The notes beneath the pieces are model-generated. The model did no database searches, was not told the origin of the DNA, and saw only the letters and a list, made by a program, of their open reading frames with translations. 64,000 nt of DNA from positions 157,109-221,108 of the IMG/VR virus record IMGVR_UViG_3300020147_000065; one strand, given 5' to 3'. Both the position numbers and the translations under genes were made by a program. Of the stretch, positions 383 to 63,871 are shown in pieces; positions within the stretch are counted from its first letter, which is position 1; every line of letters begins with the position of its first letter.

Positions 383-1104
383 AAATATTTCGGGCGCGAC
401 CTTGCACAGAGGTTGCGCCCCTGTTATACTATTGGTATAACCAATCAGGGAGAACGAAAATGTCCGACGGAAAAACGATCATCGAAGAAATTGACGAAAT
501 CGAAGAATTGGCAGCGATGGCCGACGAACACGACGCGCAAAACGAGTTCCACGATCAATTTGATGGACAGTGGAAAGTCTAACAAAACGGGCCGGCCCCT
601 ACGGGGAGCCGGCCCTCACTTTATCTGCCCCCCCCCCACTCATAAAATTTTCCATAAATTACTTGTATTTATATTCTGTTATGTTATACTTTCAGTATCA
701 CAATTAGGAGGTAGCAAAATGCTACTCGATTTATGGCCTTACTTAGTGGCCTCTTTTCCAATGACTGATATGCGGAATCGCATTGCACGTCAAATAATGA
801 AAAGGGCGATGCAACCAAAGGGTCTGGATGGCACAGTGTGGGGAACACTGACAGACAAATATGTTGATAAGTCGTTCGATAGCAACGCCCGGTATTAAAC
901 CGGGCGTTGTTGGTTTGTTTGCCCCCCCCACTCAAATTTAAGAAAATCTGCCCACCCCCGTGTTAATTTCTTCCCCTTTCGCTGCGCTATAATGGAAGAA
1001 GGAAAGTCAGGGAACTGGGTCAAAAATAAAAATAAATTTGACTTTCATTTGTCCCCGTGGTCTGCTATACTAATGTTAATTCTTTTAGGAGTGAGTTTAT
1101 CACC

Positions 1105-1605
1105 ATGAACACCACGTTAGTTAATCAGGCCGCCGCATTGAGCGCGAAACTCCGCAAAATCACCGGACGTTGCGGCGAAAACCATTCAGCCGACTATTTG
1201 AATCGCGCAGAACGCGCATATTCCCGCGCGTATGACCGCGCTATGCGTCGCGCGATGGCTGCGATGCCTTCGGCTGTTCCCGGTGTTATTCCCGTTGAGG
1301 CTATCAAATTGATGTCAGCAGCGACCTATTCTGTGCCCGTCGAATCGGTTAAAATCCTCAAAATTGAGCAGATTGCAGCCGACCATCCCGACCGCGTTAT
1401 TGACCGCGCGTGGAGTGTGCGACTGTTGGGCGAACGCACGGTTCGGGCGCGTGAACTTGATGGCGAAGATTACAGCCATGTTATCACGCATACCCACCTC
1501 GTAGAAACCCGTTATGGTCACGGTGTGCCAGAGTCCGGCAACGGTGCTTGGGGTTCGTTGTTCGGCATCACCGACAAAGGCGAATATCGCCTATGGTGTG
1601 ACTAA
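1105..1605 (+). CDS. hypothetical protein
   Basis: AGGAG RBS; start adjusted to MNTTLV. Confidence 0.7.
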   Translation: MNTTLVNQAAALSAKLRKITGRCGENHSADYLNRAERAYSRAYDRAMRRAMAAMPSAVPGVIPVEAIKLMSAATYSVPVESVKILKIEQIAADHPDRVIDRAWSVRLLGERTVRARELDGEDYSHVITHTHLVETRYGHGVPESGNGAWGSLFGITDKGEYRLWCD

Positions 1606-1709
1606 CACCACGCCTCACACCGCAAGGTGTGAGGTGCCCCCCCCCCACGCTTGCCATTTTATTTTGTTTGTGTCATACTATAGTTATCTTGATTGATGAG
1701 GTTAGTGAA

Positions 1710-2012
1710 ATGTATAAGACGGTCACTCTCGCAAAGTTACGCCGTTTGGTCGCAAACCACGGGGCAGACAGTGTTCACATTAAATTCGATGAATATGATG
1801 GGCCGGCCCGTTTGTCCATCCGAATCGGCACGACGATTTATCACACGCAATGGGTGGACTTATCAGTTCTTTGCGGTTCATTGCTCCGGTGGCGTAATTT
1901 GCGGGGTGTTAGTTGTTTCGCTAACAAAGGTCGCAATGTGGGACTCATTGGGCCTAAGAACTGGAAACTTCAAAAGGGACAGAAAAAAGAGTTCCACCCG
2001 GCTTATTTCTAA
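1710..2012 (+). CDS. hypothetical protein
   Basis: GAGG RBS, C-tract promoter, terminal hairpin. Confidence 0.65.
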   Translation: MYKTVTLAKLRRLVANHGADSVHIKFDEYDGPARLSIRIGTTIYHTQWVDLSVLCGSLLRWRNLRGVSCFANKGRNVGLIGPKNWKLQKGQKKEFHPAYF

Positions 2013-2183
2013 GCCGGGTTTGCCCCCCCCACCACGATTCAAACGCCAAAAATCGTGGTGGGGCAAGTGATCGCAATGGAAGAAGGAAAGCCAGGAAATC
2101 AGGTCAAAAATAAATTCCAAAATCACTTGTGTTTACTAAACTTTTGAGTTACACTAACACTATCTTGTTTGGAGGTTTTGGTT

Positions 2184-2495
2184 ATGTCTCTATTTGACCA
2201 CTCGATTAAAGGGCACCTGAATTGGAAAGAACAGCGCGTTGCTGTGGAATGGGCTTATCAGCGCCGCAAACAGAAAGTTCTTTTCCGTTCTCTTGAAGGC
2301 GAAGCTATCGCGTTAACAGGCGTGATATGTTTCAAAGAAACCAAGTCAGTAACCGTTGGCGGTGGTTATATGACTTTGAAGGGTCGTGACGGCCTCGCAT
2401 TACAAAATGCACCAAAGGTCGAACAATTTCCAGAGGCTCTCGTTGCGCTTGCTCGCAAAGTAATCGAACGATGGCCGGAAGAAGAAAGCGAGTGA
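2184..2495 (+). CDS. hypothetical protein
   Basis: GGAGG RBS. Confidence 0.7.
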   Translation: MSLFDHSIKGHLNWKEQRVAVEWAYQRRKQKVLFRSLEGEAIALTGVICFKETKSVTVGGGYMTLKGRDGLALQNAPKVEQFPEALVALARKVIERWPEEESE

Positions 2496-2772
2496 TTTTA
2501 CTTGCATTTGTTCTACTGGTAACAGCGCCCTTATTTATTGGCAAGCCTTATATTTTTTATGGTATCGTTATTCTGGTTGGTGTGCTTACCCTTTTAGGGT
2601 AGGCACATCGCCAGCGATGTGCCCCCCCCCTTGCATCACGATTGTAAAACTTCCTACTGGGGATCAAAATATGTGGAAGAAGGAAGGTCAGAAAATCAGG
2701 TCAAGAATAAAAAGATTTTTCACTTTGCCCCCCCCCCTTGTTGCCATCTTTATCATATGTAATAATTTAAGT

Positions 2773-3605: not shown

Positions 3606-3663
3606 TAACCATAAACGTGCCCCCCCCCCTTGTCGTGTCCCCGTGGTTTGTTAAAATAGAAGT

Positions 3664-9592: not shown

Positions 9593-9640
9593 TGCCCCCC
9601 CCCCTTGACGTTCATCCCCGTGGATTGTAAAATAATTAAC

Positions 9641-11155: not shown

Positions 11156-11206
11156 CAGCCTTGCCCCCCCCCTTGTGAACCTGCCCCGTGGTTGGTAAAA
11201 TATAAA

Positions 11207-13173: not shown

Positions 13174-13224
13174 GGAATTGCCCCCCCCCTTGCAGCATCT
13201 ATTATCTAATGTTATCCTTTAATC

Positions 13225-13779
13225 ATGGAAAAGAACGACATCCTCGATATTTACCACAAAGGCGCTGCTGTTGGTATTGCTACTCCGTTTTCTGAACTGC
13301 CATTAGGCCGATATTTTTATGATGGTGGACAGGAATATAAAAAGGTCAGCGATGACACCGCATTCGGTAATCATTCGCGTCGTTTCAATCCTTCTTATTT
13401 GGTTGTAATTACGTTGGTTACACCGCTATTTAACTTTCATGATGTGGATAAAGTTTATCTGGCGATGTGTGACCATTTCGGCGTGTTTTTCCACAGACAG
13501 AACACCCGCGCAGACGTTGCCCGTGCCTTAATGAATTTGCCCGTGTTGGTGGTTACTGAGGTTGTAGCATGGGCAAAGATGAAATGGGCGCAAAAGATGT
13601 TCGAGGTCGAAACTCAGCGCGGCATCGGCAACCCCGAAAAGTTGGCCGAATTACAGCAGACGTGGAGTGCGCTTTATAATGCGATTGCAGCAAAGCATTA
13701 TCCGGCGGGGCGTTTCTACTGGGTGGAGTGTCGCGGCGATATTCGCCGCATTGACCCTTCGCGTTACCGTTCGCGGTAA
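13225..13779 (+). CDS. hypothetical protein
   Basis: Leaderless module. Confidence 0.75.
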   Translation: MEKNDILDIYHKGAAVGIATPFSELPLGRYFYDGGQEYKKVSDDTAFGNHSRRFNPSYLVVITLVTPLFNFHDVDKVYLAMCDHFGVFFHRQNTRADVARALMNLPVLVVTEVVAWAKMKWAQKMFEVETQRGIGNPEKLAELQQTWSALYNAIAAKHYPAGRFYWVECRGDIRRIDPSRYRSR

Positions 13780-18014: not shown

Positions 18015-19050
18015 AAATCTACTCCTAATGTGGCTTTAACCACCATTTTGTAAATATCCATTGAGTCTAACACACCTGCCAACCAATCTACAACCCTTTG
18101 AATGTGCTGAAACACACAAAAAGCGACATAAACCCCAACGAGTTTGTTCCTTATCCTACGTCTTAACCAACGGTAGTAAACATGGACTTTGCGACTCATG
18201 CTCTAAGTATACCAAAAAGCTATCCACGGGGCAAGGTCTGCCCCCCCCTTGCATTTAGATACGATTTAGAGTATCCTTTAATCATGGACGAACTAATCAG
18301 AGATAACGGGAAGCTGCGCCCGTGTAAAGGGAATTTCCAAAAGATGACAATTCCACAAATTATCTGGGAATTTCAAATCAAGCAGGGTCAGTTCTGGGAC
18401 GGTTTTACTTATGTTGATTACTGGGATATTCGTAACATTCTCTTAGTCGTCATCTTTGTTGCGCTGTTGCCCGTTTCTCTACCATTCTGCCTCTACATGA
18501 GAGCAAGGAGCCAAAAGAATTACTAATGACACCTGAAGAACAAGACCGTTTCGCTAAGGAATGGGCTGAATACATTAAAGCTGATACTGAGTATCAAGAC
18601 CGGAAATTTAAAGCATCAATCGCCCCGCAGTGGGCGGGGCTTATCGGTTCTGTTATACTCTGTGGTGTGTTTATTTGGTTGTTTTGGTTGACAACACCGA
18701 AAGGATAATATGAGCTTCCAACAAGATTTATACAACGACCAGCAGGAAATGTATCGCAGGATACATCGTGCGCGAATACACGGTTTCATTATCGGTATAA
18801 TTATAGCCGGACTAATTGTGGTTATCGTGGGTGCCCTCGTTGGCACCCACTAATGCCCCCCCCCCCTGACAAAGTAAATAATTATTTGTATAATAAAGAT
18901 ATGACAAAGAGAAGATTAGGGTTAATTATCACACTTTTGATATTGTGGATTATTGTCGGAATAAGCATTTTCTTATATCGGCAAAGTATGGGTATCCCTG
19001 TTTAATGCCCCCCCTTGTAGCAAAGTAAGAACTTTGTTACAATTTATTAT

Positions 19051-19206
19051 ATGAAAAGAAAAGGTTTTACCGTCATCGAACTGCTTGTCGTAATTGCTAT
19101 CTGCGCGATTCTCATTTCTGTCATCGTTACCGGCGTTCAACGTGCGCGTGGTGGAGCAACCCAAAGCCAGGAGCGCGTAGTCCCCCGTTTTCAGCCTCAA
19201 CGCTGA
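19051..19206 (+). CDS. 51-aa type IV pilin/pseudopilin-like peptide
   Basis: MKRKG|[28 protein letters not shown]: prepilin cleavage/N-methylation motif with E5; leaderless. Confidence 0.85.
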
Positions 19207-19265
19207 GCGGCGGGGCTTGCCCCCCCCCCTTGCTCCCTTACTAACTAATTCGTTATAATCTTAGT

Positions 19266-19649
19266 ATGTCACGATACAAGAAGTCAATGGGAACATGGAA
19301 AGAGATTTGTATTTGTATTAGAGGCGCATTTATCAATTTTGACGTTGTGCAAGCCACGGGACAAGTCTTTGATTTGTATTGTGATATTCATACTCACGTT
19401 GACGCTTACAGTGAAAAAATCGAGGGTGAAAAAGAACTGAACTGGAAAGTGGGTAAGAACTCATTATTCAAACACTGTCCAAAGAAGAAAATAGCGAAAC
19501 ACATCAAACGACTCTTTGAGTCCGATGATATTATGCTGTTTCCTTATCTCGATACAGATGATAAAGAAGCAGTTAAAGATGCAGCAGAAGATAGACAATT
19601 TCTCGAAAAGATGGCTCAGTTCTACGGGATTACACTCCCGGAGGACTGA
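19266..19649 (+). CDS. hypothetical protein
   Basis: Leaderless module. Confidence 0.7.
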   Translation: MSRYKKSMGTWKEICICIRGAFINFDVVQATGQVFDLYCDIHTHVDAYSEKIEGEKELNWKVGKNSLFKHCPKKKIAKHIKRLFESDDIMLFPYLDTDDKEAVKDAAEDRQFLEKMAQFYGITLPED

Positions 19650-19697
19650 TATGCCCCCCCCTTGCCCGTGGTTTGCTTTTTAGTTAGAATGTATTAC

Positions 19698-20015
19698 ATG
19701 AAATTAGATATTAACAAAGCGTTTATTTTGGTAACAGTCATTACCGAAAAGGGTAATTCTATTACCCTGCCGTGTCGCAAATATAGTTTCAGCAAACGAA
19801 ACGGCGAATCTGAACTGAATTTGAATAGTGCGATGGATGACGGTGTGACGCCATGTGAAGGCGTTAAAGAATATTACCGCAAAAATCCCACTGCTCCAGT
19901 CGGCACCGAAGTTCTTTTGAATATGTTGCTCGCGGAAGGTATTGCGTTGGTTTACAATACCGCGACGCTCATGTATAACGAACAAGGCGAGTTGTTCATT
20001 CCTGAGGAGGAATGA
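19698..20015 (+). CDS. hypothetical protein
   Basis: Leaderless module. Confidence 0.7.
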   Translation: MKLDINKAFILVTVITEKGNSITLPCRKYSFSKRNGESELNLNSAMDDGVTPCEGVKEYYRKNPTAPVGTEVLLNMLLAEGIALVYNTATLMYNEQGELFIPEEE

Positions 20016-20433
20016 GCCTTGCCCCCCCCTTGACTAATCCCCGTGGTGAGTTAAAATGTATTACATGAAAAAGAGCAAATCCAAACCTGAACACATGACG
20101 GTTGCCAACGCAGTTAAGGTCACAATGCCGCGTCAACACTGCCCAACGCGCACAATCGAACCTAAGCGTAACAAGTTGCGCGACAAGGTTTCCAAACGCG
20201 AATTTAAACGGGGTGATTATTGATGTTTGAAAAACTCATCGCCTTCGTTCTCGGTCTGGTGTGCTTAACATGCGCTTTTACAGTTATGACTATGTTTGTT
20301 AGCATAATCTGTAATCTCGGTTGGGATTGGCAACACGTTATGCGAACTTGGTTCTGGATTTTTATCGTTCTCGAAGTTCTGTTTTGGATTGGTGGCGGCC
20401 TTAGTCAATTCGACTAAGGTTTGCCCCCCCACC

Positions 20434-20673
20434 TCAGGGATAGGCCAGTGCCGGCGCTCCCTGAGTAAAGTAACGGAGTTTCTCTATTCCTTCAAACCTT
20501 ACTTCCAATACTTCTGCACCACTTTTACCGTCTTTACCGTATCGCTTGACAGAAACAATCTCGCCTGGTGTGTTTTCAGGGACTTCTACCGTCTTCATAT
20601 CGAGTCCCAATAACTCCATGCGAGCAACGATCTTATCACCCTGTTTGAAATTAACGTCCTCTGTAAATTGCAT
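20434..20673 (-). CDS. hypothetical protein
   Basis: Minus-strand TTGACT/TATACT promoter; leaderless MQFTEDV. Confidence 0.6.
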   Translation of the reverse strand: MQFTEDVNFKQGDKIVARMELLGLDMKTVEVPENTPGEIVSVKRYGKDGKSGAEVLEVRFEGIEKLRYFTQGAPALAYP

Positions 20674-20759
20674 GATATTAGTATATAGCCAACCACGGGG
20701 GTTAGTCAATGCCCCCCCCCCCATTGCACACTCTAAACAATAGCGGTAAAATATATTCC

Positions 20760-21182
20760 ATGAGCAAAACAAAAGTAACCCCGAACAGCGTAGCATTCAG
20801 CGCGTTGCAGGAAGTTGTCAAAGTTGGTAACACGAAACTGAAAGTTCTTTTCGTTGCCGAACGCGGCGTCCACGGTGCCGAAACCTACTGGAACGACGAA
20901 ATGCGCGGCAATGTCGGCAAAGAACTGACCGTGAGAGATTCCGACGCGAGCAGCAACGAATTTCAGCTTTCCGACGATTTCTGGTATCCTGCAATCTCCT
21001 TGTTTGCTGAACCCAAACAGCCGGTAGAAGTGTCGCTGCCTGATTACACGGCGACGGTGTATCCTACCCATCTCCAAGTTGGTTATCAGGAAATCACCAA
21101 AGAAATGGTTCTGGCAATCGTCAAGGGTGGACTGGATACGGGCTTCCTCTCCACATCAGATTTGGAGGGTCTGAATAAATAA
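20760..21182 (+). CDS. tandem family A paralog 1
   Basis: GVHG..W..M..WYPA..LPDY..VG.Q..TKEM.L.IV motif. Confidence 0.85.
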   Translation: MSKTKVTPNSVAFSALQEVVKVGNTKLKVLFVAERGVHGAETYWNDEMRGNVGKELTVRDSDASSNEFQLSDDFWYPAISLFAEPKQPVEVSLPDYTATVYPTHLQVGYQEITKEMVLAIVKGGLDTGFLSTSDLEGLNK

Positions 21183-21267
21183 GCCCCGGCTCCCTTCGGG
21201 GAGCTTTGCCCCCCCTTGCGCACAGCTCTAATCTTCTGTATAATTATTAGTAATAAGGAGGCCAACG

Positions 21268-21537
21268 ATGCCTAAATCAATGTTTCGTCCATCGGATGTA
21301 ATGGACAACGCGCATTTCAATGACCACACTAAGGTCTTGACTGTGACGTTTCAGAGTGGTTCGGTTTACGAGTATGAGAATGTGCCTGAGCGCGTTTTCA
21401 ATCGTTTAAACGCCGCTCCTTCTAAGGGACAGTTCTTTAATCAGAACATCCGTAATAAATACGCATTTAAGTGTGTGTTTAAACCCGCTAAGACAACTAC
21501 AGCGCCGCAGGTTCAGCCCGTGGCTGTCACTGTCTAA
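21268..21537 (+). CDS. KTSC domain protein
   Basis: LTVTFQSGSVYEYENVP..VF..L..A.SKGQFFNQNIR. Confidence 0.9.
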   Translation: MPKSMFRPSDVMDNAHFNDHTKVLTVTFQSGSVYEYENVPERVFNRLNAAPSKGQFFNQNIRNKYAFKCVFKPAKTTTAPQVQPVAVTV

Positions 21538-21634
21538 TGTTCCTCCTTACCGGGAAACGGAGGCTTCCGGGCCTCCGTTTCTTCGGTCTGCCCCCCCCTT
21601 GTCACAAGTAAATTAAAACGATATAATCTATTAC

Positions 21635-22051
21635 ATGAGTGAAACAAACAACGTGAACATTGCTGAACTGAGCCTGAACCAAATTGCATTCTTAAAGCTC
21701 GGCCTCAAAGAAGGCGACACCGTAAAGGTTGTTGCTAAAGTGCCAGAAGGCACACACGGTTCTGATATTTACTGGGAAACGAGTATGACCCGTAAAATCG
21801 GTAAAACCCAACGAGTAGTAGGTGCGCGGAACCATAGCCGAATCGAACTCGAAGATGGGTATTACTACCCTGCCCTCGCGCTGGAAAAAGTGAAAGTTGT
21901 CAAGGAAATTCGGCTCCCTGACTACACCGCTTTAGTCAGCGAAGATGGTGTATCCGTGGGTTGCCAAAACCTCACCAAAGAAATGGTGTTGGGTATCGTA
22001 AAAGCCGCAGTGGAAACGAACTTCATTTCACAGGAGGACTTGGAGTTCTAA
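21635..22051 (+). CDS. tandem family A paralog 2
   Basis: Same motif set. Confidence 0.85.
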   Translation: MSETNNVNIAELSLNQIAFLKLGLKEGDTVKVVAKVPEGTHGSDIYWETSMTRKIGKTQRVVGARNHSRIELEDGYYYPALALEKVKVVKEIRLPDYTALVSEDGVSVGCQNLTKEMVLGIVKAAVETNFISQEDLEF

Positions 22052-22125
22052 GCCGGGAGCCGTCGAAAGACGGCGACCTGCCCCCCCCCTTGTCACTACT
22101 CAAGAATAACAGTAAAATATATTCC

Positions 22126-22545
22126 ATGAGTGATAAAGTAAAGACAATGAATGATGTGGCTTTCGAGTTTCTCAATGAGAAATTCAAAGTTGGCGACAAA
22201 GTGCGAGTCACCATGCGGGTTGACTCTGGTGTGCAGGGTAATCGAATTGACTGGCTTGAGGGAATGGAAGAGGCTCTCAATTCGGGACTTCACACTATTC
22301 TGGATACCAACGAGTCGTATGGTGCGTTCCGACTGAGTTGTGGTTACTGGTTCCCGGCGTTGGCAATCAGCTCTGATGTTGGTAAAGTCACTGTCAAACT
22401 GCCCGACTACACAGCCGAAATCACCAAAGAAAAAGTCAACGTAGGTTGTCAAGTTCTGACAAAAGAGATGATTCTCAGTATCGTAAAGGCCGCAGTGGAC
22501 ACCGGCTTTTTAAATGAGGAGGATATTGCCTCACTTAAAGGTTAA
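22126..22545 (+). CDS. tandem family A paralog 3
   Basis: Same motif set; leaderless start. Confidence 0.85.
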   Translation: MSDKVKTMNDVAFEFLNEKFKVGDKVRVTMRVDSGVQGNRIDWLEGMEEALNSGLHTILDTNESYGAFRLSCGYWFPALAISSDVGKVTVKLPDYTAEITKEKVNVGCQVLTKEMILSIVKAAVDTGFLNEEDIASLKG

Positions 22546-22624
22546 GCGGCGGGGAGCTGCCTTCAGGCAGCGACCTCTTGCCCCCCCCTTGCACTAACCA
22601 ACTAAAAACGATAGAATATATTCC

Positions 22625-23050
22625 ATGAGTGATACAACAGCAAAGACGGTTAATGATGCAGCGTTTGAGATTCTCAGCGCAACGGTCAAAGAAGGCAGCA
22701 AGGTTCGCGTAATTCTTCGTATCCCAAAAGGTATGCATGGAAGCCGCATCTCATGGGTTGACTCGATGGACGGAAACGTGGGCGTCGGTATCCACACTGT
22801 AACCGATGTAAGCCCTCGCTACGGTGCTTTCGAGTTGGACAACGAAAAGTGGTATCCTGCGGTTGCTCTTTCGGCGGACGCGGAAACCGTTCGCGTCGCG
22901 CTCCCTGACTACGAAGCAGAAATTACCAAAGATGGTATCGTAGTCGCGGGGCAGAACCTCACCAAAGAGATGGTTCTCGGCATCGTGCAGGGTGCGCTCG
23001 ACACCGGATTCCTTGATAAAGGAGATGTAGCCACTATTAAGACTTCCTAA
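22625..23050 (+). CDS. tandem family A paralog 4
   Basis: Same motif set. Confidence 0.85.
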   Translation: MSDTTAKTVNDAAFEILSATVKEGSKVRVILRIPKGMHGSRISWVDSMDGNVGVGIHTVTDVSPRYGAFELDNEKWYPAVALSADAETVRVALPDYEAEITKDGIVVAGQNLTKEMVLGIVQGALDTGFLDKGDVATIKTS

Positions 23051-23130
23051 GCAACGGGGAGCCATCCACGGGTGGCGACCTTTTGCCCCCCCCCTTGCAC
23101 CAAAATAAGATAAGCGGTATAATTTATTAC

Positions 23131-23568
23131 ATGAGCGATACACAAACAACCCCCGAACTGACCGTGAACCAAGCCGCATTTAATGTTTTAAATGCGAAAG
23201 TGACCGAAGGCGACAAGATTCGCGTCGTCCTCAAAGTGCCTATTACCGTGCATGGTAGTGATGTGAACTGGGTCGAAGAGATGGACAACACCATCAACAA
23301 AACGCTTCGCGTTCGCCGCGTTGACGCAAGCAATGGTTCTTTCTATCTCAGCAACGGCTACTGGTATCCTGCCGTGGCACTCTCCACCGAAGTAGCAAAA
23401 ATCACCGTGCCGCTGCCGGATTACACGGCGGAAATCACCAAAGAACAGGTCAACGTCGGCTGCCAGATTTTGACCAAAGAAATGATTCTCGGCATCGTGC
23501 AAGGCGCGTTGGATGTAGGGTTTCTGAGCGAAGAGGATGTGAACCGCCTCGACACCAGAGAAGTATAA
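23131..23568 (+). CDS. tandem family A paralog 5
   Basis: Same motif set. Confidence 0.85.
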   Translation: MSDTQTTPELTVNQAAFNVLNAKVTEGDKIRVVLKVPITVHGSDVNWVEEMDNTINKTLRVRRVDASNGSFYLSNGYWYPAVALSTEVAKITVPLPDYTAEITKEQVNVGCQILTKEMILGIVQGALDVGFLSEEDVNRLDTREV

Positions 23569-23642
23569 CCGGGTGGACTCTTCGGAGTCCACCCTGCCCC
23601 CCCCCCTTGCGCTGATAGAATTTAAACAGTATAATTTATTCC

Positions 23643-24059
23643 ATGAGTGAAACAAGAAAGACGGTTAATGACGCGGCGTTTGAAATCCTCAACGCACAGT
23701 TGAACATTGGTGATAGAGTTCGTATTGTCGCCAAAATTGATGAGGGTGTCCACGGCAGCAAGACTGTTTGGACATCTCGCATGAATGATAGTGTGGGTCA
23801 GTTTATGACTATTCGCGGTGTTGAACCTGAGTATGGTGCTTTTCAGTTGGATAACTATTACTGGTATCCTGCCGTGGCACTCGATACTCAGGTGCATAAA
23901 GTGACGGTTAATCTGCCGGATTATTGCGCTGAAATCACCAAAGAAGGGGTGAACGTGGGTTGTCAGAACCTCACCAAAGAAATGATTCTGCAAATCGTGC
24001 AGGGCGCGTTAGACGTGGGTTTTCTCGATGCCGAGGACATCGAAAGTCTGAAAGTATAA
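23643..24059 (+). CDS. tandem family A paralog 6
   Basis: Same motif set. Confidence 0.85.
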   Translation: MSETRKTVNDAAFEILNAQLNIGDRVRIVAKIDEGVHGSKTVWTSRMNDSVGQFMTIRGVEPEYGAFQLDNYYWYPAVALDTQVHKVTVNLPDYCAEITKEGVNVGCQNLTKEMILQIVQGALDVGFLDAEDIESLKV

Positions 24060-24136
24060 GCGGCGGGGAGCTATCGAAAGATAGCGACCTTGCCCCCCCC
24101 TTGGCAACACTCAATATAAACAGTAAAATATAAGAC

Positions 24137-24535: not shown

Positions 24536-24612
24536 GCCCCCGCGGACTCTTCGGAGTCCGCCTTGCCCCCCCCCCTTGCACAAGGTTCAAATTAAGGGGT
24601 ATAATTTATTCC

Positions 24613-27435: not shown

Positions 27436-27493
27436 GCGTCTTCCTTGCCCCCCCCCTTGCGAACTTTCCCCGTGGTTGGTTAAAATCTATAAC

Positions 27494-36893: not shown

Positions 36894-37250
36894 ATGAAGA
36901 GTAAACTATTCTTTAGTCACGAATTTCGTGGAAATCTGGAGCAAGATAATTCAGTGAAACAAACCATCGCTGATTTATTGTATCTGCGTACCGCATTAGT
37001 ATCTGCATTGGCTCACTTGCCACCCACTTACTATGATAAGGTCGTAACATCGGCAGAAATTGAGATTGCGCCTTATGTAGATTATCATAATCAAGGGGCC
37101 ATGGTTCATCTCAATGTTCAGAAGGAGAATAAACTGCGAGCAGTCTATGCTCTTGGCTGGGAACGTAAGACCAAAACCTACAGTGCAAAGAGACACGACA
37201 AGGCAATAGAGGATATAGAAACTTTTCAAAAAACTCTAAAATTCCCTTGA
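36894..37250 (+). CDS. hypothetical protein
   Basis: Overlaps the end of 36677..36904. Confidence 0.65.
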   Translation: MKSKLFFSHEFRGNLEQDNSVKQTIADLLYLRTALVSALAHLPPTYYDKVVTSAEIEIAPYVDYHNQGAMVHLNVQKENKLRAVYALGWERKTKTYSAKRHDKAIEDIETFQKTLKFP

Positions 37251-37293
37251 CGACTCCCCCGTGGTTTGGTATAATTTAATGTGAGGAAAAACA

Positions 37294-39073: not shown

Positions 39074-39580
39074 TTACTGACTTCTCTTTCGCCAGTTGGT
39101 TGCCTTGCTTTTCTCGCGTCCTACTGCACGACGATAATCTGCATTGGCACGGTCAGCGCGAACTCGCTTGTCCCATTTCGCATCAGGAACTTCTAACGTC
39201 TGACGCAGGTTTGCTGCGTAGTTGTCAGGTAGCTGCCAGATTTCCTGCAAGTCTGCGTTGGGTAATTCCCAGTTGAAAAGATGGCGAGGATACTTCAACG
39301 AGGATTGGTCGCGCTGATAACGAGTATCACATTCGGGTAAATCGTGAGTGCGACGATGGATTGAAACGGCACCGGCTGAAACCCCTAACTTGGCCGCAAT
39401 GTCGGCGTTTCGCATATTCGCCCAATCTATACCATCCCATTTCGATTTGCGTGGTGCCCCATACTGCGCTCTTTTGTTAGCAACAGTTGGGCGGGAAAAA
39501 CCAGTTTCTCGCGCAATCTGCGCGTCCGTTTTGGTTTTCCAAGCAATACGTTTCCAGTTGACTGTTTGTTTTGTGCTCAT
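39074..39580 (-). CDS. repeated-HTH DNA-binding protein
   Basis: W...DAQIARETGFSRPTV; W...NADIAAKLGVSAGAV; a third degenerate repeat. Confidence 0.7.
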   Translation of the reverse strand: MSTKQTVNWKRIAWKTKTDAQIARETGFSRPTVANKRAQYGAPRKSKWDGIDWANMRNADIAAKLGVSAGAVSIHRRTHDLPECDTRYQRDQSSLKYPRHLFNWELPNADLQEIWQLPDNYAANLRQTLEVPDAKWDKRVRADRANADYRRAVGREKSKATNWRKRSQ

Positions 39581-40943: not shown

Positions 40944-41024
40944 AATCAGCGACCTTACTACGTAGCGTTCTAAAGCAGGGAAGTTCTTGCGAGAGTTTGC
41001 AACCTCTCGTTTTTCCTGCTTAGA

Positions 41025-41417
41025 TGGAGATGTGGGTAATTGAAACCCAGTCTTGAAGTAGTAACAAAGTAGTTTATAGGCTTAGACTGTCTTTTAGTTT
41101 AGCTTTCCACGGGGCGCAGTCGTTCTAATCGTATCGGAAAGCGAGTCACTAATTCATACCGACTAATGACTGTCGTTTGGTGCTTACATTAATTACCTCT
41201 ATCTTACATCGTAAGCAATTCAGTAGAGGTTTGCTTAAACTAAATTAAGCTGCGAGACGGGCCATCTGAGCCTTAGGAGCCATAACTCCACCGAACAAAG
41301 AAACACCCTGATTAAAAACGTTGCCGTTTATAGCATGTCAGCCGTTTAAGGTGTCTGCCAACGAACACCGCCTAAATTCCTTTGATAACAAATCTTCAAT
41401 CGAAACCTGTCATCCCC
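41025..41417 (-). ncRNA. ssrA: tmRNA
   Basis: 5' GGGGATGACAGGTTTCGA; 3' T-arm plus CATCTCCA with G3:U70; tag frame 41325..41245 GNVFNQGVSLFGGVMAPKAQMARLAA*. Confidence 0.93.
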
Positions 41418-42127: not shown

Positions 42128-42140
42128 GGTATTTATTTTA

Positions 42141-42527
42141 TCACTTTCCACGGGTGCTGTCAAGCTCTATTACTTTCGCTTTTAGTTCATCAACAGCAGT
42201 TCGCCATTTGTGCCCCGGCTTAACTTCATCGGTGACCGGTGTGCATTCATGAGTAGCTGTTTGACCACTCCATGACATACGCCGACCTAAGAATTTAAAT
42301 ACCCGTGGTTTGTCCATCTTTTTAACCTCAACGATAAAGAATTGAGTAGGAAAGTATTCGGGGCCGATTGAACCCGGTAAAGTGCAGCTATGACCTGGAA
42401 CCTTCCAAAGCTCATACTTTCCTTTACGATACACAACTACGGGGTCTACTCCGTAATCAATGCCTATCGTTTCGATCTTTTTCTTATTGTCAAGGTAAGC
42501 CATGCTATACCAGTATCCCTGTGTCAT
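42141..42527 (-). CDS. hypothetical protein
   Basis: AAGGA RBS. Confidence 0.6.
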   Translation of the reverse strand: MTQGYWYSMAYLDNKKKIETIGIDYGVDPVVVYRKGKYELWKVPGHSCTLPGSIGPEYFPTQFFIVEVKKMDKPRVFKFLGRRMSWSGQTATHECTPVTDEVKPGHKWRTAVDELKAKVIELDSTRGK

Positions 42528-44896: not shown

Positions 44897-45038
44897 ACTT
44901 CAATCATATCGCAAACCACGGGGTTTGTCAAGGGTTCTCCAAAACTTTACCAATTAGTCACATGGTTGGGTAATGAGTGTGCAAGTAATGGAGAACAAGT
45001 TGACATTTGCAATCAAATTTGCTATAATCTTTCTATAT

Positions 45039-46895: not shown

Positions 46896-46962
46896 ATTCC
46901 CGTGGGTAGTAAAGGGTAATGTATGAGAGTATGTTACAAAGGGCTATCCACGGGGTTATAAC

Positions 46963-47699: not shown

Positions 47700-47963
47700 A
47701 TGTTTGGTGTAGCGAAAGAAAGATTAGTCAATGTCTTAGCTCTATTGCAACATAGTCGTTGCGCCTATGGTTCAAGTGTTAAAGAACCTACTCAGCGATG
47801 CGATTGCAAGTATGTAGCTAAAGACGCCGAAACGCTCGGACGTTTCGGCTCAGAGAGTGGGTCAACCTGTCCTGAGTTGTCTATGGCTTACGCGATCATC
47901 AATTCAATGACTGATCGAGAATACGAAAGATTTTGTAAACGGGCTGGAATTAGCTTGACATAG
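47700..47963 (+). CDS. Cys-rich hypothetical protein
   Basis: GGAG RBS; CDCKY...CPEL. Confidence 0.65.
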   Translation: MFGVAKERLVNVLALLQHSRCAYGSSVKEPTQRCDCKYVAKDAETLGRFGSESGSTCPELSMAYAIINSMTDREYERFCKRAGISLT

Positions 47964-47994
47964 CCCGTGGAAAGTGATATAATTTAAAGTAATT

Positions 47995-50672: not shown

Positions 50673-50726
50673 TTATTTTTCTGAAAGGGGTTGACAAAGC
50701 CATCCACGGGTGGTAAAATAAACACC

Positions 50727-51817: not shown

Positions 51818-51889
51818 GCGCTTGTAGTTCAGTGGTAGAACACCGACTTCTAGATTCGGGTGTGGCGGGTTCGAATCCTGCCGAGCGCA
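51818..51889 (+). tRNA. amber suppressor tRNA (CTA)
   Basis: CCGAC-TTCTAGA-TTCGG arm in a canonical body. Confidence 0.7.
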
Positions 51890-52020
51890 CTTCATCTTAA
51901 TTAAGGAGCCTACAATGAGCAAGTAGATTGACTTCATGTAGCTGTGTTCAAATAAATCACCACCCGTGGTTAGCCAGATTTCACAAACAACTGACTGACA
52001 ACAAACGGAGATTTAATACA

Positions 52021-52697: not shown

Positions 52698-52788
52698 CGA
52701 AAAGGACACCTTTCGGGGTGTCCTTTTCTTTCTAAAAATCTTTCAATTGACCTTGACAAACCCCGTGGTTTGCAGTAAAATAAATACC

Positions 52789-59285: not shown

Positions 59286-59353
59286 AGGGGAGTAGCTCAC
59301 CGTTAGAGCGTCCGTCTGGAAGGTAGCAGGTTAAATTCCTGCCTCCCCTACCA
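59286..59353 (+). ncRNA. tRNA-like unit with truncated anticodon arm and CCA end
   Basis: AGGGGAG/CTCCCCT-ACCA; D and T arms intact; anticodon arm only TCC-GTCT-GGA. Confidence 0.7.
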
Positions 59354-59354
59354 A

Positions 59355-59455
59355 AAGATAGTTACAGCAATCTTTACAGCATAGCTTAATGGATAAGCAA
59401 AAGTCTTCAAAACTTTAGATTGCGGGTTCGACTCCCGCTGCAATAAAACTATCTT
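59355..59455 (+). ncRNA. ACAGCAA-stem RNA copy 5 carrying an acceptor-less tRNA(UCA) mimic
   Basis: AAGATAGTT/AACTATCTT stem; D-arm, AAAGT-CTTCAAA-ACTTT and T-arm inside. Confidence 0.75.
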
Positions 59456-59708: not shown

Positions 59709-61190
59709 ATGGCACGAATGAATAGCCTTGTGGCTGCGCTCAACACGACTGTAACTGAGAAGGGCGCTCTCACCAACCGCTCAAGCGGTTCTGCAATGTT
59801 GGATTTCTACGGACAGATGGGCGCTATGCGCGGTCAGTCTGACTCCAACGTAAACTCTACGTTCTCCGCGGCTTTTGCTGCTGAGCGAGCACTTGCTCTC
59901 CGTTCTCTCTTCTATCTCCGTGACGTTCGCGGTGGTAAGGGTGAGCGAAAGACCTTCCGCACCATCCTTGATTGGTTGGTAAAGAATGACCCACAGGTTG
60001 TAATCAATAACCTCGATAACATCTCGTTCTATGGTCGTTACGACGACCTTGCCCGTTTGATTAACTGCGGAAACACTAAGGTGAAGAACGCAGTGGTCGC
60101 AAAGGTCAAGGCTCAGCTTGCGGCTGACAAGAACGACGAACACCCTTCGCTCTTGGCTAAGTGGATGCCCTCCATTAACGCCTCGTCCACAGAGTCTAAG
60201 TCTCTGGCGAAGAAGTGGATTCGTGCTCTCGGTATGTCCGAGGCCGAATATCGTAAGACTCTTTCTGCGCTTCGTGCTCAGATTAAGGTTGTCGAGCGTT
60301 ATATGTGCGCCCGTGATTGGGATTCGATTAACTTCGAGCACGTCCCATCGAACGCTGCAAAGCTGTATCGTAAGGCGTTTAAGACCCGCGCACCTGAGCG
60401 TTACTCTGAGTATCTCGGTGCCGTAGAGAAGGGTGAGAAGACCATCAAGGCTTCTACTCTTTACCCCTACGACCTCGTTCGTCCTTACTTGAAGGCCGGT
60501 GGCTATTACGGTGGACGTGTAAGCGTTGACCGCACTATCGAAGCACAGTGGAAGGCTCTGCCTAACTACCTCGCTGACGATGACACCGACTTCTTGGTAA
60601 TCGCGGACACTTCGGGTTCGATGTTCGACCACTCGTTGGATTTCTTGCCCATCTGCGTATCAGTGTCTTTGGCACTATACTCGGCTGAGCGTAACCGTGG
60701 AGCCTTCAAGGGCTTCTGGATGAACTTCTCAACTTCTCCTACTTTCCAGCAGGTTCGTGGTGAGACTTTGGCTGACAAGATTAGCAACATGGACTACTCT
60801 AACTGGTGTGGTTCTACCAACGTTGACAAGGCTTTCGAGTTGATTCTTTCTCGCGCTCGCGCGGCGAATGTTCCAGCCGACGAAATGCCTAAGATGTTGA
60901 TGGTCATTAGTGATATGCAGTTTGACGGTCACTGCACCGTGACGAACCTTGAGACTTGGAAGAAGAAGTTCGCAACCTACGGTTACGAGGCTCCAACCAT
61001 CGTCTTCTGGAACGTAAACGCACGTCCTGGCCAGTCGCCAATTACTGTAAACGACAAGGGTGTAATGCTTGTTAGCGGTGCGTCCGCAGAGACATTCCGC
61101 GCTGTCCTTTCCGGTAAGAACTTGTCGGCTTACGACGCAATGGTTAATACTCTCAGCAATGAGCGTTACGACCGTGTTGTTGTAGACTAA
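59709..61190 (+). CDS. DUF2828 / TROVE-like vWA domain protein (Ro60-like architecture)
   Basis: TEKGA..SSG..LDF; LFYLRDVRGGKGER; LAKWMPS; LYPYDLV; ADTSGSM; SDMQFD; FWNV. Confidence 0.9.
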   Translation: MARMNSLVAALNTTVTEKGALTNRSSGSAMLDFYGQMGAMRGQSDSNVNSTFSAAFAAERALALRSLFYLRDVRGGKGERKTFRTILDWLVKNDPQVVINNLDNISFYGRYDDLARLINCGNTKVKNAVVAKVKAQLAADKNDEHPSLLAKWMPSINASSTESKSLAKKWIRALGMSEAEYRKTLSALRAQIKVVERYMCARDWDSINFEHVPSNAAKLYRKAFKTRAPERYSEYLGAVEKGEKTIKASTLYPYDLVRPYLKAGGYYGGRVSVDRTIEAQWKALPNYLADDDTDFLVIADTSGSMFDHSLDFLPICVSVSLALYSAERNRGAFKGFWMNFSTSPTFQQVRGETLADKISNMDYSNWCGSTNVDKAFELILSRARAANVPADEMPKMLMVISDMQFDGHCTVTNLETWKKKFATYGYEAPTIVFWNVNARPGQSPITVNDKGVMLVSGASAETFRAVLSGKNLSAYDAMVNTLSNERYDRVVVD

Positions 61191-61987: not shown

Positions 61988-62463
61988 AAGCTATCCACGG
62001 GTGTTATTACGTCCATCGGTCTGCATGGACACAATTACCAAACAAAGCGGCAATCGTAAGCGCATGGCAACAGACACCTTTTGATTTTATATTTGAGATG
62101 ATTAAATATAACTCTGTTACTGGAGCTGTTACGTTTTCAGAATGTCATGATTGGGACACCGCGTGGGAACCGACACAAGGCGATTCATGGTTAATCCGTT
62201 CCGATGGTAGCACGAAGTTCATAAAACAACCGAAAGACCCTTTCGTTTATCATCACAAACATCTGTTTGTTGATTCAACATATACAGGCTTTGATATAGA
62301 CAAAAGCAAAGCCCGTTCTGAAGCAATGTCAGAGGTTATATTGAAACTCGATAAACCCTACATTGGCCGTAAGTCGTGGTGGGAGACTTTACTGGGAGCC
62401 GAAGTCTGGCGAAATAAAAAGCCCGTAAAAGTCCGTGAAATACTTGACGCCGCTACTCAGTAG
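61984..62463 (+). CDS. hypothetical protein resembling the accessory domain of DNA-phosphorothioation-associated methyltransferases
   Basis: YVHRSA...D.A.EP...YHHKHLFV..Y (recognised by eye). Confidence 0.5.
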   Translation: MKAIHGCYYVHRSAWTQLPNKAAIVSAWQQTPFDFIFEMIKYNSVTGAVTFSECHDWDTAWEPTQGDSWLIRSDGSTKFIKQPKDPFVYHHKHLFVDSTYTGFDIDKSKARSEAMSEVILKLDKPYIGRKSWWETLLGAEVWRNKKPVKVREILDAATQ

Positions 62464-62489
62464 TGGTAAAATATATTGTGAGGAAAATA

Positions 62490-62786
62490 ATGATACGAAC
62501 AAACACAAACACAGGCGCATTTGTCGCCCGATTCAATCACGAATCACCAAACGAACAGCACCGTGGCAAGTCCACCTTTGAACTGGAACAAGAGTTCGGT
62601 GAAGGTAACGCTCTCCAACTCTCCAAAGTAGAAGTAAATGTCCATGAAGGCGACCAGTTCTGTCGTCGAACAGGCCGACGAATCGCTTTCCGTCATGCGA
62701 TGCGAACGCTACGGCACAACAAAGTGCTTGGCCGACCAGAGCGAAAAGCTATTGGTGATGCCATTCGACAGAAAGTTAAGTTGTAA
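62490..62786 (+). CDS. hypothetical protein
   Basis: DQFCRRTGRRIAF motif; GAGG RBS. Confidence 0.7.
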   Translation: MIRTNTNTGAFVARFNHESPNEQHRGKSTFELEQEFGEGNALQLSKVEVNVHEGDQFCRRTGRRIAFRHAMRTLRHNKVLGRPERKAIGDAIRQKVKL

Positions 62787-62871
62787 GGAAAAAGGGCACC
62801 TTTCGGGGTGCCCTTTTCTGCGCTGCCCCCCCCCCTTGCAGGTATCTAACTTCTAAGGTATAATATATTCC

Positions 62872-63447
62872 ATGACACACATCACAAAAGACGTTAATGG
62901 ACTTCCTTTCACTGTTGTTCATGCTTCTGCTCTCGATATTCCTGCTGACTCTATAGTAAACGCGGCCAATTCTGGTCTAAGAGCCGGTAGCGGTATCTGT
63001 GGGGCGATTTATAAAGCCGCAGGTGCCGAAATCCTGAATCGTTATGTCCAAACTCGATTCCCTAATGGGAGTAATACCGGACAATCTGTTATTACCCCTG
63101 CTTTTGGACTTCAAAATCACAGGCGTATTATCCACTCTGTCGGCCCACGATACGATGACCATACTCCACAGGAAGCGGCGCATTATCTGACAATGGCTTA
63201 TTCCTCTGCTATCTATGCTGCTAATTTGGTTGGTAATTCCGTAACGTTCTGTGGGCTATCCACGGGGATTTACGGATACCCTCTTGATGAAGCCGCGTGG
63301 GTTGCTATAAACACTGTAGCCTCACACCTTTATGGTATTGGCTCAAATATGGTTGTGAACTTTGCTCTATTTCAACCAGAAGAGTATCAGGCTTTTGCTA
63401 CTGCTCTCATAAACTGTCAATTTGGTGGGATTACAAGTAATGCCTGA
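62872..63447 (+). CDS. macrodomain ADP-ribose hydrolase
   Basis: IVNAANSGL..GSGICGAIYKAAG; IIHSVGP; LSTGIYGYP. Confidence 0.93.
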   Translation: MTHITKDVNGLPFTVVHASALDIPADSIVNAANSGLRAGSGICGAIYKAAGAEILNRYVQTRFPNGSNTGQSVITPAFGLQNHRRIIHSVGPRYDDHTPQEAAHYLTMAYSSAIYAANLVGNSVTFCGLSTGIYGYPLDEAAWVAINTVASHLYGIGSNMVVNFALFQPEEYQAFATALINCQFGGITSNA

Positions 63448-63871
63448 CCCTAAGCGCGATAGTAAATTCATGGATTTGGCGTTTAAATACGCTGCTGATA
63501 CGCCTCAATTCGCATGTGCGCGAGTTGGGGCTATCCTCGTTATTCGTAATGAGGTGATCGCTTATGGTTTTAATACTGATAAGAAGCATCCTCTTGCTGT
63601 TAAACACCAGAAATGCGAAGGTGCGATTTATCCTCATGCAGAAGTAATGGCGGTTTATAATGCAGCTAAGAGACTTACATGGAGAGAATTTCAAAAGAGC
63701 ACTCTCTATGTGGCAAGGGCTAAACAAACCATCCACGGGGAAACAATTAAAGGTCTTGCAAAACCTTGTGTGGGTTGTCAGGGTTTGATTGAGCAGTTTA
63801 GAATAAAACGTGTCGTCTGGACGGACGACACTATTTTCTGCGATTGGTCGCGCGGTGACCCGTGGGACTAA
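63440..63871 (+). CDS. cytidine/dCMP deaminase family protein
   Basis: HAE...PCVGC. Confidence 0.9.
   Translation: MPDPKRDSKFMDLAFKYAADTPQFACARVGAILVIRNEVIAYGFNTDKKHPLAVKHQKCEGAIYPHAEVMAVYNAAKRLTWREFQKSTLYVARAKQTIHGETIKGLAKPCVGCQGLIEQFRIKRVVWTDDTIFCDWSRGDPWD

What the first reader, a model, noticed from the sequence alone, without database searches (positions are those of the whole stretch)
1053..63866. Over-represented CCACGGG/CCCGTGG motif in promoter spacers and coding DNA
Seen: about 45 copies by eye, versus roughly 4 expected for this 7-mer on two strands at an estimated ~43% GC. They occur about every 1-2 kb in both orientations, often as AACCACGGGG or TATCCACGGG. About 18 sit between -35 and -10 (e.g. 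3640, 9617, 11185, 20039, 37258, 47963, 50704, 52762); many others lie inside ORFs. Inference: binding site of a genome-wide phage protein (repressor, nucleoid or segregation factor) or a methylation mark. The repeated-HTH protein at 39074..39580 is one candidate reader.
Basis: partly seen in the sequence, partly recalled or inferred. Interest (0 to 1): 0.68.

Follow-up and report, generated by a model that had tools for sequence, protein, structure and literature searches.

The report
Strand-specific 12-base signal across phage
An uncultivated 221-kb phage carries about 137 copies of a 12-base word, kept on both DNA strands by selection and spaced so that same-direction copies avoid each other, which points to a directional DNA signal of a kind not yet described for this phage group.

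Summary
CCACGGG/CCCGTGG occurs 49 times in the window against 5.4 expected. It occurs 138 times in the whole 221,108-base virus contig against about 15-17 expected. After the poly-G/poly-C run it is the most enriched 7-mer.

The full word is about 12 bases: (C)CCGTGG-W-T-D-G-C, with G at +10 in 128 of 138 copies. Inside genes it lies in all three codon phases and on both strands. There are 87 genic copies against 15.4 expected after synonymous-codon shuffling, so the selection acts on the DNA.

About 18 window copies sit in sigma-70-like promoter spacers, nearly always reading with transcription.

The new result is that neighbouring copies alternate in orientation (94 of 137). Same-orientation pairs closer than 1 kb are depleted (18 against about 35-43 expected), but opposite-orientation pairs are not. 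No other comparable word in the genome behaves this way. Each strand's copies therefore act as a separate, directional signal.

My best guess (about 0.3) is a Chi-like signal for a DNA-tracking helicase-nuclease. Operator sites, nick sites and priming sites remain open. I found no methyltransferase, and the proposed HTH reader is unsupported. No relative shares the word and the host is unknown.

The parts
1054..63865 (.). All 49 window copies of the 7-base core. CCCGTGG reads on the + strand at 1054, 3640, 4313, 5723, 8405, 9617, 11185, 14176, 19665, 20040, 21517, 25080, 27469, 37258, 37964, 42302, 46899, 47964, 51963, 52762, 58754, 63859. The other 27 copies read on the - strand.
3630..3657 (+). 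Poly-C early promoter (TTGTCG, 16 nt, TAAAAT) with a sense copy in the spacer at 3640-3646; a leaderless ATG follows.
9605..9633 (+). Poly-C early promoter with a sense copy in the spacer (9617-9623).
11173..11201 (+). Poly-C early promoter with a sense copy in the spacer (11185-11191).
19662..19690 (+). Poly-C early promoter in which the copy (19665-19671) overlaps the -35 hexamer.
20030..20057 (+). Poly-C early promoter (TTGACT, 16 nt, TAAAAT) with a sense copy at 20040-20046.
27457..27486 (+). Poly-C early promoter with a sense copy at 27469-27475.
37247..37275 (+). Promoter without a poly-C tract (TTGACG, 17 nt, TATAAT) with a sense copy at 37258-37264.
42135..42163 (-). Second promoter class: TTGACA, 3 nt, the word, 7 nt, then the -10 hexamer. 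The copy at 42148-42154 is sense on the - strand.
44903..44931 (-). Second promoter class with a sense copy at 44916-44922.
47955..47983 (+). Second promoter class with a sense copy at 47964-47970, upstream of a tRNA cluster.
52753..52781 (+). Second promoter class with a sense copy at 52762-52768.
20680..20709 (-). Minus-strand promoter-like site next to a poly-G tract, with a copy at 20693-20699 that is sense to that strand.
50691..50719 (+). The one strong promoter whose spacer holds the word in antisense orientation (50704-50710).
46899..46954 (.). Convergent pair 49 nt apart (start to start), between tRNA-Thr and tRNA-Ser. It is one of five such close pairs in the genome, all convergent.
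18224..18230 (-). Copy 5-13 nt upstream of a poly-C tract, reversed relative to the + strand promoter. The same arrangement occurs at 23066, 28583 and 35565.
41107..41113 (-). Copy inside the phage tmRNA gene (41022-41417, - strand).

Best explanation
The word (C)CCGTGG-W-T-D-G-C is a strand-specific, direction-dependent cis signal. Selection maintains it separately on each strand at about one copy per 3.2-3.5 kb per strand. It is most likely read by a machine that moves along the DNA or acts on one strand.

The specific mechanism I commit to is a Chi-like signal. A RecBCD/AddAB-type helicase-nuclease, probably the host's, enters at a break or a genome end and meets a correctly oriented copy. 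It then stops degrading the DNA and hands it to RecA, which the phage itself encodes. Because the assembly closes into a circle, ends or breaks could arise anywhere and enzyme entry could come from either direction, so copies would be needed in both orientations.

Shown: the enrichment, the DNA-level selection, the 12-base extent, the strand-specific short-range exclusion and the promoter subset. On this reading the promoter-spacer copies are placed in the only sequence-free stretch of the densely packed early cassettes, and they spread when those cassettes duplicated.
For: 1. Enrichment of 8-9 fold genome-wide.
2. There are 87 genic copies against 15.4 +/- 3.4 after synonymous shuffling, in all three phases and both orientations.
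3. Neighbouring copies alternate in orientation in 94 of 137 cases, permutation P < 5e-5. This holds outside the early region too (58 of 82).
4. Below 1 kb there are 18 same-orientation pairs against 51 opposite-orientation pairs. Label permutation gives a mean of 34.5 +/- 4.1 same-orientation pairs, P < 5e-5. Below 250 bp there is 1 same-orientation pair against 10.7 expected.
5. Among 1,146 strand-balanced 6/7-mers of similar copy number, this word ranks first for alternation and first for same-orientation depletion.
6. The 3' half is G/T-rich and the core ends in GTGG, as in E. coli Chi (sequences quoted in 10.1101/2020.08.13.249359).
7. The phage encodes a bacterial-type RecA. Six-frame Pfam searches found no PDDEXK_1 nuclease or UvrD-type helicase domain, i.e. 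no recognisable RecB/AddA-type helicase-nuclease of its own.
8. The genome is heavily shaped by defence evasion. Nineteen of 64 palindromic hexamers are absent and an Apyc1 homologue is present.
9. There is precedent: lambdoid phage LLS carries 23 Chi, one per 1.86 kb, under selection (PMC12315714).
Against: 1. Known Chi words are contiguous and 5-8 bases long. This word spans 12 bases with a gap pattern that suits a protein on duplex DNA.
2. In promoter-like spans there are 16 sense copies against 2 antisense. A Chi function does not predict this and needs a side argument.
3. In Chi-rich phages the copies cluster and share one orientation. Here same-orientation copies avoid each other.
4. Long gaps are not rarer than chance. 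The largest same-strand gaps are 11.5 and 14.2 kb, P 0.2-0.3. The regularity is therefore short-range exclusion, not coverage.
5. The nearest relative (TerL 50% identical) has no copy in 23.8 kb and no analogous word.
6. The host is unknown, so the key prediction is untested. E. coli K-12 has only 16 copies of the 12-base pattern in 4.6 Mb. Known Chi words of E. coli, B. subtilis, L. lactis and S. aureus are not enriched in the phage.
Confidence: 0.3

Rival explanations
1. The copies are operator sites for a phage-encoded protein, most simply a monomer given the asymmetric site, that binds the 12-bp duplex site. In promoter spacers it represses or tunes a subset of early and tRNA promoters. 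Inside genes it acts as a directional roadblock, like the stoperators of cluster A mycobacteriophages.
For: The site is 12 bp and gapped, and it tolerates changes at the first core base but not at the T-G-G. Sixteen sense copies lie in promoter-like spans, about five times the already high genome density, at preferred offsets of 11-14 nt to the -10 hexamer. A near-identical promoter class carries the word at a fixed place. The density of one per 1.6 kb matches that of stoperators (my own knowledge of L5 gp71). The word is absent from a relative, as expected for a private reader.
Against: At least 63% of copies are inside genes, in both orientations relative to transcription (36 sense, 51 antisense). 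An orientation-blind binder does not predict that only same-orientation pairs are depleted. No reader was identified. The HTH candidate is sub-threshold, and the ten genes tested downstream of word-bearing promoters show no DNA-binding domain.
Confidence: 0.27
2. The copies are recognition sites of a phage nicking or strand-specific endonuclease, as in the localized nicks of T5, phiKMV-like phages and phage tf. Alternatively they are hot spots that start recombination-dependent replication. Close direct copies would be unstable and so are selected out.
For: Nick motifs in known phages are asymmetric, 9-19 nt long and strongly over-represented. Phage tf has 14 copies of a 9-mer in 46 kb, one per 3.3 kb on its strand, which equals the per-strand density seen here (PMC3517423). 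The genome holds several HNH and GIY-YIG endonuclease genes. Orientation-specific, distance-dependent exclusion fits deletion between direct repeats at breakage-prone sites.
Against: In every described case the sites lie on one strand only. Here both strands carry them, and eight opposite-strand pairs lie within 130 bp, which would amount to double-strand breaks if both were nicked. No reads were available to look for molecule ends.
Confidence: 0.12
3. The copies are priming sites. The phage Prim-Pol protein has a C-terminal winged-helix domain that recognises the word, and it starts DNA synthesis on one strand. The result is one priming site every few kb on each strand.
For: The protein has a Prim-Pol domain plus HTH_24/MarR-like winged helix. 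Its gene carries a convergent pair of copies near its 5' end. The strand-specific and short-range-redundant pattern fits priming.
Against: Replicative primases recognise about 3 bases; 12-base specificity is known to me only for origin-bound enzymes. Same-strand gaps of up to 14 kb would be long for lagging-strand fragments. I did not check whether another primase is present.
Confidence: 0.07
4. The word is a methylation or other base-modification target.
For: It is an asymmetric word of the length typical for some modification enzymes.
Against: Six-frame search found no N6/N4, C5 or Dam-type methyltransferase and no TGT/DpdA. Modification targets are not normally enriched. The extreme restriction-site avoidance argues that the DNA is unprotected by modification.
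Confidence: 0.04
5. The word is a DNA-uptake-type or other host-genome word mirrored by the phage.
For: It resembles uptake sequences in density, in occurring in both orientations and all frames, and in being spaced more evenly than chance (the even spacing of H. influenzae uptake sequences is my recollection, not checked here).
Against: Known uptake words are not enriched. A lytic-looking phage gains nothing obvious from uptake. The close inverted pairs lie inside genes rather than forming terminators.
Confidence: 0.04
6. The enrichment is a by-product of composition, codon usage, restriction-site avoidance or repeated cassettes.
For: Four one-base neighbours of the core contain avoided restriction sites. 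Some promoter copies are probably duplicates of one cassette.
Against: The enrichment survives order-1 and order-3 Markov models and synonymous shuffling. The one-base neighbours that do not contain an avoided restriction site occur at roughly chance level, not depleted. The conserved flank, with G at +10 in 93% of copies, and the orientation pattern cannot arise this way.
Confidence: 0.01

Closest known systems
Chi sites accumulated by phages (lambdoid phage LLS and relatives; PMC12315714, PMC3784561)
   Same: A short, asymmetric, G/T-rich word is enriched many-fold by selection. Its density is about one per 1.6-1.9 kb, it sits inside genes, and its function is direction-dependent.
   Different: This word spans 12 bases with a gap instead of 5-8 contiguous bases. 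Both orientations are equally common and alternate, where Chi-rich phages show one orientation clustered near an end. A promoter-embedded subset exists. The host, and whether the host genome carries the word at high density, are unknown.
Stoperators of cluster A mycobacteriophages (L5 gp71 sites; from my own knowledge)
   Same: An asymmetric 12-13 bp site occurs dozens of times across the genome at about one per 1.5-2 kb, with some copies overlapping an early promoter.
   Different: Stoperators are mostly intergenic and all point one way relative to transcription. Here most copies are genic and both directions occur in the same gene blocks. No repressor gene was recognised, and the phage looks lytic.
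Localized nick motifs of phages tf, T5 and phiKMV-like phages (PMC3517423)
   Same: An asymmetric consensus of 9 or more bases is strongly over-represented. The per-strand density equals that of phage tf.
   Different: Known nick motifs are confined to one strand. Here both strands carry the word, sometimes only 38-67 bp apart.
DNA uptake sequences of Pasteurellaceae and Neisseriaceae (PMC3458573, PMC1939737)
   Same: The word occurs genome-wide in both orientations and all reading frames at about one per kb.
   Different: The sequence is different. The carrier is a phage of unknown host. No link to competence is known, and the close inverted pairs are not terminators.

Membership tests
Chi (crossover hotspot instigator) sites | Asymmetric word strongly over-represented against composition and codon usage | tested here: met
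   138 copies against 15-17 expected; 87 genic against 15.4 after synonymous shuffling
Chi (crossover hotspot instigator) sites | Contiguous word of 5-8 bases | tested here: not met
   Information spans 12 positions, with G at +10 in 128 of 138 copies and T at +8 in 87
Chi (crossover hotspot instigator) sites | Orientation-dependent action reflected in the arrangement of copies | tested here: inconclusive
   There is no global strand bias (63 against 75), but the two orientations behave as separate classes
Chi (crossover hotspot instigator) sites | Same word over-represented and skewed in the host chromosome | not testable with these tools
   The host is unknown and no prokaryote genome handle was obtainable. 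E. coli K-12 is negative
Chi (crossover hotspot instigator) sites | Attenuates RecBCD/AddAB nuclease activity | not testable with these tools
   Needs biochemistry
Stoperator-type operator sets | Asymmetric site of about 13 bp repeated across the genome, one overlapping an early promoter | tested here: met
Stoperator-type operator sets | Single orientation relative to transcription | tested here: not met
   36 sense against 51 antisense genic copies
Stoperator-type operator sets | Predominantly intergenic | tested here: not met
   87 of 138 copies lie inside my conservative gene calls, which cover 77% of the genome
Stoperator-type operator sets | Cognate repressor encoded by the phage | tested here: inconclusive
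   The only candidates are a sub-threshold HTH ORF and the Prim-Pol winged helix. The proteome was not fully scanned
Phage localized-nick motifs | Asymmetric consensus of 9 or more bases, over-represented | tested here: met
   compare
Phage localized-nick motifs | Sites restricted to one DNA strand | tested here: not met
   63 copies on one strand and 75 on the other
Phage localized-nick motifs | Physical nick at the site in virion DNA | not testable with these tools
Methylation or modification motif | Cognate DNA methyltransferase or base-exchange enzyme encoded | tested here: not met
   No PF01555, PF00145, PF02086 or PF01702 match in six frames. Other enzyme families were not searched
DNA uptake sequences | Both orientations, all frames, about one per kb | tested here: met
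DNA uptake sequences | Word shared with a naturally competent host | not testable with these tools
   The host is unknown. Known uptake words are not enriched

The most novel reading that the evidence does not exclude
The word is a private 'self' code of this phage lineage. On this reading a strand-specific 12-base signal is read by a phage-encoded tracking or strand-specific enzyme, not by the host. This would be a phage-owned analogue of Chi, with copies of like orientation kept more than about 1 kb apart.
Probability: 0.15. Interest if true: 0.85.

Novelty: new variant of a known kind. Interest (0 to 1): 0.66.

Why it matters
Genome-wide directional words such as Chi, KOPS and uptake sequences are rare, and each one revealed a machine that reads DNA while moving along it. 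Here such a word is found in an uncultivated jumbo phage with no close relatives. Its orientation pattern, alternation with short-range exclusion of like-oriented copies, was not mentioned in the papers on phage Chi and nick motifs that I consulted. If it is Chi-like, it would give the Chi word of an unknown host and show a large lytic phage using Chi mimicry alongside extreme restriction-site avoidance. Either way the word is a ready handle for DAP-seq, nick mapping or nuclease assays.

Tried and rejected
- **Relatives.**
  - Megablast and tblastn against GenBank phages gave nothing close.
  - IMG/VR pattern and protein scans gave only single chance matches.
  - One of those, L056, has 4 copies in 38 kb but lacks the flank.
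  - The protein word search on the terminase found one relative at 50% identity. That search sees only proteins of 0.55-1.75 times the query length.
  - Its 23.8-kb locus has no copy of the word. The candidate words there (TGATGGT, CACCAGT) follow gene sense, so they reflect codon usage.
  - The rest of that record is not held.
  - Fifteen more distant portal relatives from metagenomes are not enriched.
- **Host.**
  - Both genome-contig scans found nothing.
  - The PAS/PP2C protein has only hits of 39% identity or less, with source names from several phyla.
- **Known words.** Chi, uptake, KOPS and HIP1 words are not enriched.
- **Mutational by-product.** Rejected. The one-base neighbours that do not contain an avoided restriction site are at about chance level.
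- **Late or middle promoter.** Rejected. Copies alternate in orientation inside the one-directional structural gene block.
- **Protein motif.** Rejected. Copies occur in all three phases and both strands.
- **Position within genes.** There is no significant 5' or 3' bias.
- **Literature.** Searches for the word itself gave nothing relevant.


Full report
**Setting.** The window is the last 64 kb of a single 221,108-base contig. That contig is an IMG/VR virus record estimated by CheckV to be 89% complete. It is identical to metagenome contig Ga0196976_1000013. Its first 187 bases recur at the end with one poly-C length difference, so the assembly closes on itself and one copy of the word is counted twice.

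The genome has the gene set of a large tailed phage:
- rIIA, a DnaB-type helicase and a family B polymerase;
- a terminase that carries an intein;
- a 2,423-residue ORF in the structural gene block;
- a bacterial-type RecA and an Apyc1 homologue;
- a class II ribonucleotide reductase;
- 36 tRNA genes and a tmRNA gene in the window.

**The observation.** CCACGGG/CCCGTGG occurs 49 times in the window against 5.39 +/- 2.28 in shuffles. It occurs 138 times in the genome against 14.9-16.8 under order-1 and order-3 Markov models. Only the poly-G/C runs are more enriched. Density is similar along the whole genome.

I made a crude gene prediction that covers 77% of the genome. By that prediction 87 copies are genic. 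They fall in all three codon phases, 36 in sense and 51 in antisense. Shuffling synonymous codons within each gene gives 15.4 +/- 3.4 copies. The word is therefore kept at the DNA level, through codon choice. Because the gene calls are conservative, the count of 51 intergenic copies is an upper bound.

**Extent of the word.** I aligned all copies.
- C precedes the core in half of them.
- T lies at +8 in 87 copies, G at +10 in 128, and C at +11 in 80.
- With the .T.GC flank as anchor, cores changed at the first base, or G to C at the fourth, are still enriched 15-40 fold. Changes in the final T-G-G never occur with the flank.

The signal is thus about 12 bases long: (C)CCGTGG-W-T-D-G-C. One-base neighbours of the core are at about chance level unless they contain an avoided restriction site. 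This argues against a mutational or conversion origin.

**Promoter subset.** The window and the first 8 kb of the genome hold about 90 nearly uniform early cassettes. Each has a hairpin, TG, 8-11 C, TTGCAN, a 17-nt spacer, a TATAAT-like hexamer and, about 7 nt later, an ATG.

- Eleven of these cassettes carry the word in the spacer, all in sense. Five more have it reversed just upstream of the poly-C tract.
- A second, near-identical promoter class lacks poly-C and places the word exactly 3 nt after TTGACA. It has five copies in the window's tRNA region and one at genome position 92,033.
- Strong -10 hexamers start 11-16 nt after the word's first base (mostly at 12 or 14 nt) in 20 copies, against about 1.3 expected.
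- A uniform scan finds 16 sense and 2 antisense copies inside promoter-like spans, against about 3.3 expected per orientation at the genome's own density.
- The tool's scan agrees for the four cases in 19000-28700.

The ten genes I tested downstream of such promoters give no DNA-binding family.

**Orientation pattern (new).** Pooled spacing looks Poisson-like, with CV 0.95, but orientation is not random.

- Neighbouring copies alternate in 94 of 137 cases (permutation P < 5e-5). This holds in every part of the genome, including 58 of 82 between 8 and 154 kb.
- Same-strand gaps are more regular than chance, with CV 0.68 and 0.84.
- Same-orientation pairs are depleted at short range:

| Distance | Same-orientation pairs | Expected |
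|---|---|---|
| under 250 bp | 1 | 10.7 |
| 250-500 bp | 5 | 10.7 |
| 500-1000 bp | 12 | 21.4 |

- Opposite-orientation pairs are not depleted: 51 below 1 kb against 42.8 expected.
- Keeping positions fixed and permuting the orientation labels gives 34.5 +/- 4.1 same-orientation pairs under 1 kb, against 18 observed (P < 5e-5).
- As an empirical control I took 1,146 strand-balanced 6/7-mers with 90-220 copies. This word ranks first for alternation (0.686 against 0.471 +/- 0.052) and first for same-orientation depletion. Its own sub-word has the second-highest alternation.
- Long gaps are not rarer than chance, so the feature is short-range exclusion rather than even coverage.
- The five closest pairs, 38-67 nt apart, are all convergent. 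The four of them that lie in genes sit within 180 nt of the start codon. With so few cases I treat this as a note only.

**What this means.** The two orientations behave as independent classes. This is expected if the word is read on one strand or by something travelling along the DNA. It is not expected for an orientation-blind duplex binder. Copies occur in both directions inside long one-directional gene blocks. The traveller is therefore unlikely to be RNA polymerase. An enzyme entering from breaks or ends in either direction, a replisome-associated activity, or a strand-specific nuclease would fit better.

**Choice among mechanisms.** I rank a Chi-like signal first, at about 0.3. The reasons for it are:
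- the strength of the DNA-level selection;
- the G/T-rich core ending in GTGG;
- the phage-encoded RecA, with no recognisable RecB/AddA-type helicase-nuclease of the phage's own (no PDDEXK_1 or UvrD-helicase match);
- the heavy imprint of defence evasion on this genome;
- the precedent of phages that accumulate Chi at one per 1.86 kb.

Against it stand:
- the 12-base gapped form;
- the sense bias in promoters;
- the exclusion of like-oriented copies, where Chi-rich phages show clustering;
- the lack of any analogous word in the nearest relative.

An operator set for a phage protein (0.27) explains the form of the site and the promoter subset. It does not explain the genic majority or the orientation pattern. 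Nick sites (0.12) match in motif type and per-strand density, but in all known cases they lie on one strand only. Site-specific priming by the Prim-Pol/winged-helix protein is possible but without precedent at this specificity.

A methylation mark is unlikely. I found no methyltransferase of three major families and no TGT-type enzyme. The genome also removes restriction sites rather than protecting them.

**Comparison and novelty.** No relative shares the word. This covers one relative at 50% terminase identity, 15 distant portal relatives and the IMG/VR pattern scans. E. coli K-12 has 16 copies of the 12-base pattern in 4.6 Mb. Literature searches for the word found nothing relevant. I file it as a new variant of the known kind 'genome-wide directional DNA word in a phage'. 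It meets some defining features of Chi sets, stoperators and nick motifs, but for each family at least one tested feature is not met. I therefore do not claim membership of any of them.

**Limits.** The analysis rests on one metagenome-assembled genome. There were no reads, the host is unknown, the gene calls are crude, and I did not scan the whole proteome for DNA-binding proteins.

Noticed in passing
window 600-63900 and genome 1-8000 (e.g. window 22581-22640): About 90 near-uniform early cassettes: a hairpin, TG, a run of 8-11 C, TTGCAN, a 17-nt spacer, a TATAAT-like hexamer and an ATG about 7 nt later. This implies leaderless early mRNAs. All 99 poly-C/G tracts of 7 or more bases lie between 154 and 221 kb or in the first 8 kb of the genome.
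   Followed up: partly
whole genome; also L016: Extreme restriction-site avoidance. Nineteen of 64 palindromic hexamers are absent and 28 have at most 2 copies. CTAG occurs 14 times against 583 expected. The non-palindromic words CCCGAG, GCACGC, GCAGGC and GCCCGC are also absent. The 50%-identity relative shows the same avoidance (CTAG 0 against 84 expected, GATC 0 against 89).
   Followed up: partly
window 41022-41417 (-): A phage-encoded tmRNA (Rfam RF00023, 89 bits) that ARAGORN did not report. Its predicted tag is long and ends in LAA.
   Followed up: partly
window 38266-59447: Thirty-six tRNA genes, including two with stop-codon-reading anticodons: CTA at 51818-51890 and TCA at 59374-59447. 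The latter and a further tRNA-like hit at 59286-59350 lie just upstream of a Ro-like RNA-binding protein gene (59709-61190). This recalls Ro/Y-RNA pairs.
   Followed up: no
window 13181-13240, 25060-25110, 25407-25460, 34201-34260: Several poly-C cassettes have GTTATCCTTTA in place of a TATAAT-like hexamer, before the ATG. This may be a second promoter type.
   Followed up: no
genome 1-187 and 220923-221108 (window 63815-64000): The contig ends overlap by about 186 bases and differ only in poly-C length (11 against 10). The genome is therefore probably complete and circular in assembly, although IMG/VR classes it as linear.
   Followed up: yes
L008:6183-8930 (-) and L016:10001-13786: The large terminase carries a LAGLIDADG intein. 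The relative's copy is 1,261 residues long and shows an additional intein-splicing domain hit.
   Followed up: no
L003:8992-9987 (-), L003:12959-14530 (+), L005:14551-15375 (-), L004:14382-15398 (+): An anti-Pycsar Apyc1 homologue, a PAS-PAS-SpoIIE (PP2C) phosphatase, a second PP2C and a bacterial-type RecA are encoded outside the window.
   Followed up: partly
genome 7899/7955, 61434/61472, 84204/84271, 96330/96393; window 46899/46948: The five closest pairs of the word are all convergent. The four that lie in genes sit within 180 nt of the start codon. One of these genes encodes the Prim-Pol protein.
   Followed up: partly
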